A DNA stretch of 64,000 nucleotides from Auanema rhodensis (taxonomy: Eukaryota; Animalia; Nematoda). Shown in pieces: positions 41,802 through 46,319 of this stretch (position 1 is its first letter; every line of letters begins with the position of its first letter). The translations under genes were made by a program, and so were the position numbers. The DNA is taken from positions 8,804,001-8,868,000 of the forward strand of contig OZ059896.1 of assembly GCA_964057225.1 (NCBI GenBank), given 5' to 3'. The notes beneath the pieces are model-generated. The model was not told the origin of the DNA and made no database searches. It saw only the letters and a list, made by a program, of their open reading frames with translations.

Positions 41802-43036
41802 ATGGCTTGTGAAAGTCTTCGAATAGCTCAAATCGACTCAGCTGTTTTGGATACTGAGTTCAAGCAACTGGCTCTGGAGCAGGTGGAATCTGCCATCGAA
41901 GTTTTGCCTTACACTGTAGTGAGAAAGTTGGATAGTTTGAAGCCTGAAGTATCCCTTTTGCTAGATTCTTGTTTATGGTCTATTCGATATTCCCAGGGTT
42001 AATATACTTATATATGTAAAATTGAAATTGAAAATAATTTTAAGGTGCTTCTCTTGGTCAGATAGAAGAAGATGTCGCTTATAAAGATTACGATACGTCT
42101 AAGGTTCTAGACTTAATTTTTTCGTTTTCTTTCTTACTACGATATAGATTAATCTTCATTATTGTTGGTCCATCATATTACCATACTTAGCTCAAAGAGC
42201 ATCCACATCAGCAAGAACTGGGAGGCTGGAAACTGTTCTTCGTAAAGTTGAAGCTTTATTTGAAGTTAGAAATAAATGAAAAATAACGGTATAGCTGGAA
42301 ATTTCAGATTTTTAGCCTGGCTCATTATTTGAGATTTTTACGAAGAGGTGGACATAGTACAATTCCTGAACAAATTTTGGGTTTAAGAAATTGGAACAAT
42401 AATCCTCCTAGTATAGGTTCGTCGCTTTTAACCGTTGAAACGCTGAAAATTATATAAGCGTTGTAATCAAAGTTCTCTGCTCGAACTACTCATAACCAAA
42501 AAAAAATTTTTTTACAACATCATGTTAAGTTTAGTTTAAATTTTTAGTTCCACCAGAAATTTATATTTCCGCAATTATATTGTGCATCTTGAAGTAAAAG
42601 TATATCATTTAATACTACCCTCACAATAATATATTTATTCTCTCTCTGAGTTGATGATCGTTAGTTACATAAAAACATTATGGATTAAAAAAATATTATG
42701 CAAATCATTATTTCAGGAACAGTCAATTATGAAACACAGAACAGGGAACTACTATGGCATGCATTTAGAGATGGTTTGCAACTTGCATGGCCTTTTTTTG
42801 CATTTTTTCAAAGATATTGGATGAGATATAATCGTTCTTTCTATACTAAAAAAGACGAGAATTGTTCGAATTGTGGAGTTTGTTCTAAAACAGCAGTAAT
42901 CCCAGTGATCTGGCATCAATGTGGTCACATCGCTTGTTATTGGTGTGACCGTTCAAGAAAAGAAGGATACAGCTTGTGTGCAGTATGTAACGAACCAGGA
43001 TCATCCAAATTCAAAATGGGAGAAAAAATGAAGTAA
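41802..43036 (+). CDS. prx-2: Peroxin PEX2 (RING peroxin)
   Basis: LRIAQIDSAVLDTE, KPEVSLLL, ASLGQ, VNYETQNRELLWHAF, C-terminal RING CGVC..CGHIACYWC..CAVC. Confidence 0.93.
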
Positions 43037-43629
43037 GCAAAGATATATAGAAGAGCCAAAGAGTGTTCCGTTATGGATATGAGAAGCCTGTAATACTTAA
43101 GTTGGAGTTGTAAATAACTTTAATCTGTGATAGTTCCATTGTCATATTTTTCTTTTCCAACTGTATATATGTTTGCAACTTTATTAAAACTTTTTCTTTA
43201 TTATCAATCAAATTTCAAATCATTTTGATTATTTCACTATTTGCAAAATAGTGTATCGTGTGAAATTGACCAAGCTTTTTCACCGGGTCCACGAAGTTCT
43301 GAGTCAGTTGGTCCGTTTCGTTCGCGAAAACACACCTGCCACTGTGAGTTACTGAAGTTTTAAACAATCAGCAGACAACATCAATCCGATCACAGTAAAC
43401 GGACAACAAGTGTGAGCACGAGAAGAGGAAGAAATTTTTGGCCTCTCATTGATATTCCTCAGAAAGTTCTCATTCATATCAATACTGATCAAAAATTGAA
43501 AGAAATTTGATGACAATTTCTTGTACTTGTGTGACATGTACTTTTTTTATTTTAAAAGTTCAATTGAATTCAGAAAACAAAAAAAAAAGTTGAAAACAGT
43601 TTGATTTTCTGAGAAAAATAAATACTTAC

Positions 43630-43797
43630 TTAGTGCTCGTCTTTACCACCAACTGACATAGCTGATGTGGCAACCATGTAAAGAAGTGCCATGAGGCAAG
43701 CAAGAATAAGAAGGTTAACGATCAGAATGATAGTGTTCTTATCGAAATGTTGCTCTGCAGCTTCTACGATGGATTGTTTACGAGAATTACTGGCCAT
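43630..43797 (-). CDS. 55-aa single-pass membrane micropeptide, phospholamban/regulin-like (inferred)
   Basis: MASNSRKQSIVEAAEQHFDKNTIILIVNLLILACLMALLYMVATSAMSVGGKDEH*; TTTCAG acceptor 7 nt before ATG, GTAAGT donor directly after TAA, codon-like composition; not in ORF track (<60 aa). Confidence 0.8.
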   Translation of the reverse strand: MASNSRKQSIVEAAEQHFDKNTIILIVNLLILACLMALLYMVATSAMSVGGKDEH

Positions 43798-44535
43798 CCT
43801 GAATCTGAAACAGATTATATCAATGAACAGACTTACTATTAAGAAAGTTTCATAAAGGTTAAAGAAAAATGAGATGATAAGCTTGATCGAGAGATGGAGC
43901 TCTTCAGAAATATTTACTTTATATTTGAGATAGTAGTGCTACGAAAAGTATTCCTAAGTTCATCCAACTATCATTTTTCTCAGATCAATCATTTTTAAGA
44001 AGTATAAACAGCACTAAAATTTGGAAATGGAAAAACTATAGGAAACAGAAAGCGGCGAACTCAAGGAGAAAGTTTGTGTCGTTTCAATCCGGAAGAAACT
44101 AAGAGGTTCTCAACGGATAATGGGAGGAGTCTTGTTTCTTGAGCTGATAAACTATCACAACAGGGTCGTTTACTGCTGATGGCCTATCCTACAATCAATA
44201 AGTTCTGAATTTTTCTCGTACCCTTAATGACTAGCATAAAACAACACCTGCAAAACATAAACTGCAATGTGCTTCACAATTGCAGATAAAATACAAATAA
44301 CCACAAAGAAAATATTGAAAAAAAAATTAAACTAAGCTCGGTAAAAAAGAAATCATCTTTCATTCACATTATTAAACACATTATTCAGATATCAATTAAA
44401 AAATACTTAAACTACTTCTAAGGAAGTCATCATAAATTTGCAAAATTTAAATTGCGTTACTACAATTAATACCAGTTTTTCATAATCACACGACATCCAA
44501 CCTATCAAAAACTATTACTATTGGAATTGCCAAAA

Positions 44536-45573
44536 CTACAACTTGTTGGATTCAAGAACTTTTACAGCAGTTCCAGGTTCAATATGACCTAATTTTTCGC
44601 CTAATGAAAAAAGAGCAGTTTGTAGCTCATCAGTTATATATTTTCTTCTAGCTAATCCTTCCATATCTCCTGTTGTGCGCATTTCTTCAGTATCAATGGG
44701 ATTTCCAACATATATTTCCACTTTCTTTATGTGACAAAAATATTATTATTAATTTTATTGCTAAGATTACCTGCCCGAATCGCGGATAATACGGAGGATA
44801 CGTCGGCCATACTTTGTCCATATTTTGGCACCATATAGGGATTACAATAGGAGGCTTTTTGGAATCCATAACCAAACGACCAACACCCCATTTGAATCTG
44901 AAAAATTCTAAAATAAAAACAAATTGGTGGAAACCGAACCTCAACGGAGTTTCAGTTACCCTTCCTTCTGGAAAGATGTGTACCCAATCGTTATTATTCA
45001 ATTTTTCTACAGAAAAATTCATTCCATCCTGATAAACACCGGCACCACGCACACAAGGAACACAACGACCAAGAGAAAAAATACTGAAAGACAGTTAATA
45101 CATTTTTTTTCAAAAGCGTAATTACTTGGTATGCCACTGCTTAGAGAAGCATATATTATGAGCAGCTAGTGTATATCTATTCCTATTCAAGTTACGAATG
45201 AGTTCAGACCAAGATAACATTACTGAAACGTTTTTATTTGTGTGTTATAAAATATGACTTACCCCACATCAAAGGATCATCAATATTACATCTGTGGTTA
45301 GATATGGTTATCAACGGTCTCGAAGTATCTTCTAGTTGGCGTACAAATATTTCCTTATTACGAACGATCAGTTTATTGCCTATAATAACTGTTTATGTAA
45401 AATTATGAAACAAAAGAAATACCTTTGATGAATAAAATCCGAGATACCGAAGACACAAAGCTCATTGTAGCAAAAGATTTCATTTTATACAAAATTGACT
45501 GTTTCTTCGGGAAAGGCCAAGCGAACTTGAAGCCCTCCTTAGAAGCCGCAAGATCTCTTTGCGTTCCCGTCAT
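44536..45573 (-). CDS. acl-3: Tafazzin (cardiolipin transacylase)
   Basis: RPLITISNHRCNIDDPLMW, YTLAAHNICF, GRCVPCVRGAGVYQDGM, WVHIFPEGRV, FKWGVGRL. Confidence 0.95.
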
Positions 45574-46319
45574 TAGAAAACAATGCAGAAACTAAAAACT
45601 AATTAAATATCTGAAAGTAACACAATGAAACAATATCGTAAGCTAATATAAGCAGAATAGAAACAGAATAACAGTAACTCAAGGAAATTAACATGCTGAA
45701 GAGAGAAGAGCAGCGTGCGTACAAAGTTTTTAGTTGAACGTCAAAAGTAGGCTAGATCGTAAATGATAAAAAATTGGGATCAGGATATATTAAAATTATC
45801 AATTTTTTAAGTTTCAATAGTACTGTATAAAATATGAAACTTAAGCAAACCCTTATACGAACTTATGTTGATAATCAATAATAACAAGAATATTTGAATC
45901 GCATGCGATAGATTTATGTTCAGAACAATTCATATTGTTATTTTTCTGTTTAACTGTAACACTGATTTGAAATATAGTCAGGAAGCTTCAAAAACTCACA
46001 AGCTTGACAGTATCATTGCAAAGATTCAGTTTTTCACAATTCTGCGTTACTTGAAACATTCACATCAAATCCAAATTTGGTTTATAAAATCGTACAAAAT
46101 GAACGATTTTTATTTTGTACTGTGTCAATAAAATAATTCAGATGATCCTATAATAAACATAACATAATTGACATGTAATATGTACTTCTGTTGTAGAATA
46201 CCGTATATATTCCATAAGCAAAATTTCACATATCAATATTCCCAAATAGCCTTTTTACGTGAGATCAGCAGTCCTCGATAAAAGCAGCTTCCACTGTTTG
46301 AACGTTCACTGTTCCGAAT

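What the first reader, a model, noticed from the sequence alone, without database searches (positions are those of the whole stretch)
43630..43797. Phospholamban-like micropeptide between PEX2 and tafazzin
Seen: a 55-aa ORF with a strong TTTCAG acceptor just upstream, a basic kinase motif R6-K-Q-S9-I-V-E and one TM helix I23-V42 containing L25-x-x-N28 and a TM Cys. Known: phospholamban (52 aa) has R-R-A-S16-T-I-E (PKA site) and L31-F-I-N34, with L31 and N34 essential for SERCA inhibition. Ser-to-Asn spacing is 18 there and 19 here. Arthropod sarcolamban lacks this PKA-site domain, and I know of no described nematode regulin. Inference: a nematode SERCA (SCA-1) regulator under PKA control.
Basis: partly seen in the sequence, partly recalled or inferred. 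Interest (0 to 1): 0.9.

Follow-up and report, generated by a model that had tools for sequence, protein, structure and literature searches.

The report
Conserved nematode phospholamban-like membrane micropeptide
The 55-codon reading frame is a real, transcribed gene, the orthologue of C. elegans ZK809.8, found across nematodes; it has the layout of a phospholamban-type calcium-pump regulator, but neither descent from phospholamban nor action on the pump is shown, and databases already auto-name it "Cardiac phospholamban".

Summary
Observation confirmed. The ORF 43797..43630 (minus strand) exists as described. It lies between PEX2 and tafazzin.

- **Transcription:** RNA contigs join it, right after its TAA, across a 542-nt intron to a 3'UTR exon.
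- **Conservation:** about 60 homologues span Nematoda, including Romanomermis-type, Plectus, filariae, Strongyloides and Caenorhabditis. The tafazzin / micropeptide / PEX2 order is kept. pN is about 0.1 while synonymous sites are saturated.
- **Key residues:** N28 is invariant (45/45). L25 (44/45), S9 (41/45) and R6 (39/45) are nearly so. The TM Cys is not conserved (4/45).
- **Helix face:** conservation in the membrane helix follows a 95-100 degree period, so one face is conserved.

Interpretation partly supported. The phospholamban (PLN)-like design is real: tail anchor, R-K-x-S-hydrophobic site, L-x-x-N, helix-break-helix. Homology to PLN is not.
- The hhalign score of 18.4 equals the mean of column-shuffled PLN profiles.
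- The Pfam PLN model matches 2 of 45 members, below its cut-off.
- No PLN chain was found in the PDB by profile search.

No test of SERCA binding was possible. The C. elegans orthologue ZK809.8 and several others already carry the automatic name "Cardiac phospholamban". I found no functional paper. SERCA regulator: about 0.4.

The parts
43633..43797 (-). Coding sequence of the 55-aa micropeptide, orthologue of C. elegans ZK809.8
   Evidence: ORF. Homologues at E 1e-20 or better. pN about 0.1 against saturated pS. Covered by RNA contigs.
43630..43632 (-). TAA stop codon, the last three bases of exon 1
   Evidence: Sequence. The joint at 43630|43087 is present in four runs.
43805..43810 (-). TTTCAG acceptor, the probable spliced-leader trans-splice site. 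The mRNA body starts at 43804, leaving a 7-nt 5'UTR.
   Evidence: Contigs stop at 43806 (X4) or at 43811 with one mismatch plus 4 unaligned letters (X3). That is the pattern expected if the SL1 3' end GTTTGAG overlies genomic GTTTCAG; this is an inference, as the contig letters were not seen. Acceptors also sit directly before the ATG in L006 and N. brasiliensis.
43762..43782 (-). Basophilic kinase consensus R6-K-Q-S9-I-V-E12
   Evidence: Conservation is R 39/45, S 41/45, E 42/45, with I/L/M at +1. Phosphorylation was not tested.
43657..43731 (-). Membrane helix I23-M47 with L25 and N28 on a conserved face (N21, I24, L25, N28, I31, L32, L35, L39, A43)
   Evidence: AF2 helix 20-50, with pLDDT 94-97 in its core. 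Conservation periodicity peaks at 95-100 degrees, and 8 of 10000 shuffles reach it.
43633..43656 (-). Short C-terminal (luminal) tail ending K-D-E-H
   Evidence: E54 is present in 40/43 members and the last residue is H or N in 35/43. The luminal orientation is inferred from the tail-anchor topology.
43088..43629 (-). 542-nt GT..AG intron in the 3'UTR, beginning immediately after the stop codon
   Evidence: The joint is in contigs of all four runs, with CT..AC ends on the + strand.
42639..43087 (-). 3'UTR exon, antisense to the last (RING finger) coding exon of PEX2
   Evidence: Contigs X3 rec10 and X4 rec13 span 42639/42642-43086 joined to 43629-43806/43811. The PEX2 exon joint 42414->42715 and its reading frame are.

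Best explanation
This is a real gene for a tail-anchored membrane micropeptide, the orthologue of C. elegans ZK809.8, conserved throughout nematodes. Shown here: the gene is transcribed, its transcript is spliced, and its protein sequence is under strong purifying selection. Predicted by AlphaFold: a short cytosolic helix (8-17) followed by one long membrane helix (20-50). One face of the membrane helix is conserved and carries an invariant Asn. A near-invariant R-K-x-S-hydrophobic kinase consensus lies 12 residues before the membrane. A short tail ends in an acidic motif. Inferred mechanism: the peptide inserts into the ER/SR membrane. It docks through its Asn-bearing helix face into a transmembrane groove of a partner. 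By analogy with phospholamban, sarcolipin and the other regulins, that partner is most likely the SERCA pump (SCA-1), whose apparent Ca affinity it would lower. Phosphorylation of S9 by a basophilic kinase such as PKA or CaMKII would relieve the effect. I treat it as a functional analogue of phospholamban, not as a demonstrated homologue. Gene real and coding: above 0.95. SERCA regulator: about 0.4.
For: ORF and motifs are. Spliced RNA contigs occur in four runs of one study. Their word depth is about 1300-2000, against about 10 for the PEX2 and tafazzin contigs of the same runs; depth is only a rough guide. About 60 homologues cover Dorylaimia-type, Plectida and Rhabditida clades III-V. The order tafazzin, micropeptide, PEX2 is kept in C. 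briggsae, Loa and Wuchereria. pN is 0.09-0.11 against pS 0.58 or more. The AF2 model is helix-break-helix with mean pLDDT 78. The families share 7 conserved identical residues, a count reached by 10 of 300 shuffles. Asn34 of PLN and Asn11 of SLN are critical for SERCA inhibition through Thr805, and a polar residue at that depth is expected in all inhibitory regulins (PMC8396278). Divergent Romanomermis-type members lack S9 but carry RR[AM]S further upstream. A basophilic site in the cytosolic part is therefore kept even where its position moves.
Against: There is no direct evidence for SERCA binding, for phosphorylation, for ER localisation or for expression in muscle. The profile similarity to PLN is no better than chance: 179 of 400 segment-preserving shuffles reach the observed score. 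Pfam PF04272 matches only 2 of 45 members, at best E 0.0055, among about 30 unrelated TM families. No PLN or SLN chain appears in the PDB profile search. The PLN domain Ia helix is absent, because only 8 residues precede S9. The PLN cysteines and the F32/F35 aromatics are absent. The conserved face follows a heptad g-a-d pattern with Asn, which fits homo-oligomerisation equally well. The Ser-to-Asn spacing varies within the family: 19 here, 20 in Meloidogyne and Heterodera, and much longer in the Romanomermis type.
Confidence: 0.4

Rival explanations
1. It is a conserved tail-anchored micropeptide that has nothing to do with SERCA. Its Asn-bearing leucine-zipper-like face would drive homo-oligomerisation, or binding to a different membrane partner such as another pump, channel, translocon or lipid enzyme. 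The kinase site would regulate that other interaction.
For: Only one helix face is conserved, and it follows a heptad pattern: I24/L25, N28, I31/L32, L35, L38/L39. From general knowledge, Asn in TM helices is a classic driver of self-association. There is no statistical link to PLN. [quoted passage not shown]
Against: SERCA is the recurrent target of this class of peptide, with seven regulins listed in PMC8396278. No nematode regulin turned up in my paper searches. The combination of LxxN at the cytosolic-leaflet depth with a juxtamembrane basophilic site is what PLN uses. The acidic C-terminal tail and the very hydrophobic TM argue for ER rather than mitochondrial targeting (inference).
Confidence: 0.35
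2. It is a true evolutionary homologue (orthologue) of vertebrate phospholamban, as the automatic database name implies.
For: ZK809.8 and orthologues in three other species are named 'Cardiac phospholamban' in UniProt/GenBank. The raw hhalign P-value is 0.006 with the functional residues aligned. The conserved-identity test gives P of about 0.03. Romanomermis-type members have RRAS-x-x-T-E-I-R-P, resembling PLN's RRASTIEMP (hhalign P 2.5e-4, probability 43%).
Against: The shuffle control removes the hhalign signal. The Pfam match is below its cut-off and no better than matches to unrelated TM families. The same family is also auto-named TRIQK, SecG, FlhB and Col_cuticle_N in other species, which shows that such names come from weak TM hits. 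My PLN search returned only vertebrate proteins. No intermediate family was found in 1.84 billion representatives. The RRAS match in the Romanomermis type lies at a different position from S9.
Confidence: 0.12
3. It is a chance ORF in a non-coding or UTR transcript.
For: It is very short, lies in a single exon, and no protein identical to it is in the searched collection.
Against: The amino-acid sequence is conserved across the phylum, with saturated synonymous and few non-synonymous changes. Synteny is conserved.
Confidence: 0.01

Closest known systems
C. elegans ZK809.8 (UniProt A5Z2S9, NP_001122836.1) and its nematode orthologues such as C. briggsae CBG06103
   Same: It belongs to the same family, at E about 1e-23 to the family profile. 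The core is shared: SRK(Q/H)SIVEAAE.HFDKNT.ILIVN..IL..L..LLYMVATSAM. The position between tafazzin (acl-3) and PEX2 (prx-2) is the same.
   Different: The window's species was not among the predicted proteins searched; the nearest protein is 87% identical over its aligned part. The window peptide has C34 where most members have V. The C. elegans gene model has a 9-residue longer N-terminus.
Phospholamban (PLN, Pfam PF04272)
   Same: Both are tail-anchored peptides of about 52-55 aa. Both have a basophilic R-[RK]-x-S-hydrophobic-x-E site. Both have Leu-x-x-Asn at the cytosolic end of the TM helix, 18 or 19 residues after the Ser. Both have helix-break-helix architecture.
   Different: There is no significant sequence relationship. 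The domain Ia amphipathic helix before the phosphosite is missing. F32, F35 and the three TM cysteines are missing. An 8-residue luminal tail ending in D-E-H/N is added, where PLN ends within the membrane.
Sarcolipin and endoregulin (regulins with a luminal tail)
   Same: They share the TM Asn (SLN N11) and a conserved short luminal tail. In SLN the tail is required for inhibition (PMC8396278).
   Different: The tail sequence is unrelated: RSYQY against G-G-K-D-E-H. SLN has almost no cytosolic domain. I made no sequence comparison with tool-derived SLN or ELN sequences.
Arthropod sarcolambans
   Same: They are invertebrate SERCA-binding micropeptides and tail-anchored (10.1101/2020.07.19.211243).
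   Different: From general knowledge, sarcolambans are about 28 aa and have no phosphorylatable cytosolic domain. They were not compared here because I had no tool-derived sequences.

Membership tests
Nematode ZK809.8 micropeptide family | Significant full-length sequence similarity | tested here: met
   E 5.6e-21 to 1e-10 with a single-sequence query. Profile hits reach 2e-30. ZK809.8 itself scores 1.1e-23.
Nematode ZK809.8 micropeptide family | Conserved position between tafazzin (same strand, upstream) and PEX2 (convergent) | tested here: met
   Window. C. briggsae, Wuchereria and Loa.
Phospholamban (PF04272) | Match to the family profile above the curated cut-off | tested here: not met
   The window protein has no PF04272 hit at E up to 10. 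PF04272 matches 1 of 22 and 2 of 45 members, at best E 0.0055, alongside about 30 unrelated families.
Phospholamban (PF04272) | Profile-profile similarity beyond that expected from composition and topology | tested here: not met
   The hhalign score is 18.43. Segment-preserving column shuffles give mean 18.41, sd 3.85, and 179 of 400 reach the observed score. The conserved-identity count is marginal at P about 0.03.
Phospholamban (PF04272) | Cytosolic PKA consensus R-R-x-S with a hydrophobic residue at +1 | tested here: met
   The motif R6-K7-Q8-S9-I10 is present, with R 39/45 and S 41/45. The motif only was tested; phosphorylation cannot be tested here.
Phospholamban (PF04272) | N-terminal amphipathic helix (domain Ia, residues 1-16) preceding the phosphosite | tested here: not met
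   Only 8 residues precede S9, and they are variable and of low pLDDT.
Phospholamban (PF04272) | Leu31-x-x-Asn34 on the pump-binding face of the TM helix | tested here: met
   L25 is present in 44/45 and N28 in 45/45 members, both on the conserved face. The importance of Asn34 is stated in PMC8396278. The importance of L31 rests on my own knowledge (Kimura et al. 1997).
Phospholamban (PF04272) | TM cysteines and the Leu/Ile zipper of the pentamer | tested here: inconclusive
   C34 occurs in only 4 of 45 members. A heptad Leu/Ile pattern exists (L25, L32, L39; I24, I31, L38), but the oligomeric state cannot be tested here.
Regulins (functional class of SERCA-binding micropeptides) | Tail-anchored single-pass peptide with a polar residue at the Asn34 depth | tested here: met
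   AF2 predicts a helix at 20-50, there is no N-terminal signal sequence, and N28 is invariant.
Regulins (functional class of SERCA-binding micropeptides) | Binds the M2/M6/M9 groove of SERCA and changes its Ca affinity or Vmax | not testable with these tools
   No complex prediction and no assay was available.
Sarcolipin | Luminal tail R-S-Y-Q-Y | tested here: not met
   The tail here is S-V-G-G-K-D-E-H, and the family consensus ends [KR]-D-E-[HN].

The most novel reading that the evidence does not exclude
Nematodes have their own regulin: an abundant, phosphorylation-gated inhibitor of SERCA (SCA-1). It would combine a phospholamban-type R-K-x-S switch and L-x-x-N pump-binding face with a sarcolipin-type conserved luminal tail, having arisen independently of or diverged beyond recognition from vertebrate PLN. 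That would give a genetically tractable C. elegans model (ZK809.8) for kinase control of Ca re-uptake. It would also give a nematode-specific handle on muscle Ca handling in parasites.
Probability: 0.35. Interest if true: 0.75.

Novelty: new member of a known kind. Interest (0 to 1): 0.55.

Why it matters
If the peptide regulates SERCA, phosphorylation-gated micropeptide control of the Ca pump would not be a vertebrate speciality. The seven listed regulins (PMC8396278) include no nematode member, so C. elegans genetics could then be applied to the problem through ZK809.8. The family is specific to nematodes and highly conserved in parasitic species, including filariae, hookworm relatives, Haemonchus and Strongyloides. 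That makes it relevant to the muscle physiology of parasites. If the partner is something else, it is still an abundant, phylum-wide micropeptide with a clear interaction face and no known function. The idea is not wholly new, because public databases already label the C. elegans protein "Cardiac phospholamban". My tests show that this label rests on a weak, statistically unsupported match.

Tried and rejected
- **Single-sequence Pfam and NCBIfam scans:** only sub-threshold noise such as DUF3377, Orf78 and RIFIN.
- **PDB profile search with the family alignment:** no PLN or SLN chain; the two matches have E above 0.5.
- **ESM Atlas feature search:** no usable hit.
- **Fold searches with the AF2 model:** Foldseek against the PDB found nothing. 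VIA-align wide gave only generic long helices at Z below 5. Fold comparison cannot discriminate a single helix.
- **BLASTP of the divergent member P0099 against human PLN:** no alignment.
- **Paper searches for a nematode regulin, ZK809.8, its accession or its tryptic peptide:** one incidental mention only. The sarcolamban preprint does not mention nematodes. The conserved-sORF catalogue PMC4568590 does not contain the peptide in its held supplements.
- **Source organisms of P0099 and P0100:** could not be found by accession. P0099 is placed by its 69% identity to a Romanomermis protein. P0100 remains unplaced.
- **Alternative readings rejected:** the ORF as part of a larger coding gene is ruled out, because the TAA is inside exon 1 and the downstream exon has no conserved frame. 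A KDEL-type retrieval signal is unlikely, because the C-terminal residue is H or N rather than L (general knowledge).

Full report
**1. The observation**

The minus strand carries ATG at 43797-43795 and TAA at 43632-43630.
- R6-K-Q-S9-I-V-E;
- a hydrophobic stretch I23-M47 containing L25-x-x-N28;
- C34.

TTTCAG lies at 43810-43805, seven bases before the ATG. The neighbours are as stated. PEX2 is on the plus strand, with its RING-finger last exon at 42715-43036. On the minus strand, at 44363-45641, is an acyltransferase with the tafazzin-type HxxxxD motif. I reconstructed both from splice joints in RNA contigs.

**2. It is a transcribed, spliced gene**

Four small runs of one study hold the stretch. 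Their contigs skip the short GT..AG introns of PEX2 and tafazzin, so they derive from RNA.
- All four runs contain a joint that removes 43088-43629 (GT..AG on the minus strand). It links the ORF exon to a second exon at about 43087-42639.
- The donor GT follows the last base of the TAA directly. The ORF therefore ends as read, and the intron lies in the 3'UTR.
- The second exon has no conserved frame. It is antisense to the PEX2 RING exon.
- Contigs carrying this joint have word depths of about 1900-2000 (X1, X2). The PEX2 and tafazzin contigs of the same runs have depths of 11-15. Contig depth is a rough measure, but it suggests an abundant mRNA.
- At the 5' end the contigs stop at 43806, or at 43811 with one mismatch and four further unaligned letters. 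This is what an SL1 leader ending in GTTTGAG would give over genomic GTTTCAG. It is an inference, because I did not see the contig letters.

**3. It is a conserved protein-coding gene**

A single-sequence search found 22 proteins of 55-96 aa at E 6e-21 to 8e-8, all named ones from nematodes. Two further searches raised this to about 60 proteins: an exhaustive profile search of 1.84 billion representatives and a profile word search. The named species include:
- Caenorhabditis, Haemonchus, Nippostrongylus, Necator, Angiostrongylus and Dictyocaulus;
- filariae, Enterobius, Syphacia, Gnathostoma and Thelazia;
- Strongyloides, Panagrolaimus, Bursaphelenchus, Aphelenchoides, Ditylenchus, Meloidogyne, Globodera and Heterodera;
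- Plectus, and a divergent Romanomermis-type group.

The C. elegans member is ZK809.8 (NP_001122836.1, UniProt A5Z2S9).

The gene order is kept in C. briggsae, Wuchereria and Loa: acyltransferase, then the micropeptide on the same strand, then a convergent PEX2.

Against two strongylid relatives, non-synonymous divergence is 0.09-0.11. Synonymous sites are at or near saturation, with pS 0.58-1.06.

**4. Anatomy of the family (45 sequences, alignment A4)**

- Invariant: D19, N28, I31, L32, L39.
- In 90% or more: S9, E12, K20, T22, L25, L35, Y40, A43.
- R6 is present in 39 of 45.
- C34 is not conserved (4 of 45).

Conservation over residues 21-44 has a period of 95-100 degrees per residue, and only 8 of 10000 shuffles reach that moment. 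One face of the helix is therefore under constraint: N21, I24/L25, N28, I31/L32, L35, L39, A43. This is the signature of a helix-helix interface in the membrane.

AlphaFold2 with this alignment gives helix 8-17, a break at 18-19 and helix 20-50. Mean pLDDT is 78, rising to 94-97 in the TM core.

The C-terminal tail is variable in length but ends in [KR]-D-E-[HN] in most members.

Clade IV members add further upstream basic-Ser sites such as MRRPS. The Romanomermis-type members lack S9 but have RR[AM]S about 12 residues further upstream. A basophilic kinase site in the cytosolic part is thus a family constant, even where its exact position is not.

**5. Is it phospholamban?**

I collected 26 vertebrate PLN sequences. 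My typed human query was returned as 100% identical to PPLA_HUMAN.
- **hhalign:** The score is 18.4, P 0.006, probability 6%.
- **Shuffle control:** I shuffled the PLN columns separately within the cytosolic and TM segments. The mean score was 18.4 (sd 3.9), and 179 of 400 shuffles reached the observed score. The profile similarity is explained by shared topology and composition.
- **Conserved-identity count:** counting only residues conserved and identical in both families gives 7, reached by 10 of 300 shuffles. This is marginal and post hoc.
- **Pfam:** PF04272 does not match the window protein. It matches 2 of 45 members at best E 0.0055, among about 30 unrelated TM families.
- **PDB:** a profile search finds no PLN or SLN chain.
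- **Fold searches:** uninformative for a single helix.

Homology to PLN is therefore not demonstrated.

The name "Cardiac phospholamban" is attached in UniProt/GenBank to ZK809.8 and to the Nippostrongylus, Haemonchus and Gnathostoma proteins. Other members of the same family are auto-named TRIQK, SecG, FlhB or Col_cuticle_N-domain protein. This shows how fragile such names are.

**6. What it most likely does**

The design features match the PLN/SLN type of pump regulator:
- a tail-anchored peptide of about 55 aa;
- an invariant Asn three residues after a near-invariant Leu, at the cytosolic-leaflet end of the TM helix and on the one conserved face;
- a juxtamembrane R-[KR]-x-S-hydrophobic site;
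- a conserved short luminal tail;
- apparently high mRNA abundance.

The regulin review PMC8396278 states that Asn34 of PLN and Asn11 of SLN are critical through contact with Thr805 of SERCA M6. [quoted passage not shown] It lists seven regulins and no nematode member.

I therefore take a phospho-regulated SERCA (SCA-1) regulator as the single most likely mechanism, at about 0.4. It would work like PLN in its switch and like SLN or ELN in having a luminal tail.

The main rival, at about 0.35, is that the same Asn-bearing, heptad-patterned face mediates self-association or binding to a different membrane protein. Nothing here discriminates between the two. No tool for complex prediction was available, and I found no tissue or localisation data.

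**7. Prior knowledge**

I found no paper describing a nematode regulin or the function of ZK809.8. The one paper that names the gene lists it as a miRNA target in a transcriptomic screen. The gene is annotated in C. elegans and several other nematodes, and the PLN label is already public. The window's own species was not represented among the predicted proteins searched; the nearest protein is 87% identical over its aligned part.

**8. Verdict**

The finding is a worthwhile, directly testable lead.

Noticed in passing
window 42639-43629 (-) versus PEX2 exon 42715-43036 (+): The micropeptide mRNA has a 3'UTR intron that starts at the base after the stop codon. Its roughly 450-nt 3'UTR exon is fully antisense to the RING-finger coding exon of PEX2. 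In the same runs its contig depth is about 100 times that of the PEX2 contigs. Antisense interference with PEX2 is possible but was not examined.
   Followed up: partly
L009:4714-4753 (N. brasiliensis), L005 and L004 just after 8171 (Loa, Wuchereria), L006:4169-4180: Donor-like GTAAGT or GTGAGC motifs lie 1-10 nt after the stop codon in these species too (directly after it in the window). A 3'UTR intron next to the stop may therefore be conserved across clades III and V. C. briggsae shows no such motif. Only the window's intron has RNA support.
   Followed up: partly
P0099, P0120, P0121, P0124 (Romanomermis-type homologues); L001:1426-1671: These divergent members carry RR[AM]S-x-x-T-E-I-R-P in the cytosolic part, which hhalign matches to PLN's RRASTIEMP (P 2.5e-4, probability 43%). 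They have I-N-F-L-I-L in the TM helix, like PLN's I-N-F-C-L-I-L. The site lies at a different distance from the membrane than S9.
   Followed up: partly
L002:85-417 (P0100, assembly GCA_024449465.1): This is a 110-aa single-exon relative with the D-K-x-T ... N-x-L-I-L ... L-L-Y core and two upstream RRxS-type sites. I could not determine the source organism. It may or may not be a nematode.
   Followed up: no
window 43755-43798, run X1: One high-depth contig (453) goes back from 43798 to 43755 with 7 extra letters between the two sides (table 5c). It is probably an assembly artefact at the 5' end of an abundant transcript. It remains unexplained.
   Followed up: no
database gene models P0012, P0074, P0083, P0073, P0075, P0077: Many public gene models of this family are wrong at one end. 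Some read through the post-stop intron, and others are fused to upstream ORFs. This probably helps explain why the family has been overlooked.
   Followed up: no
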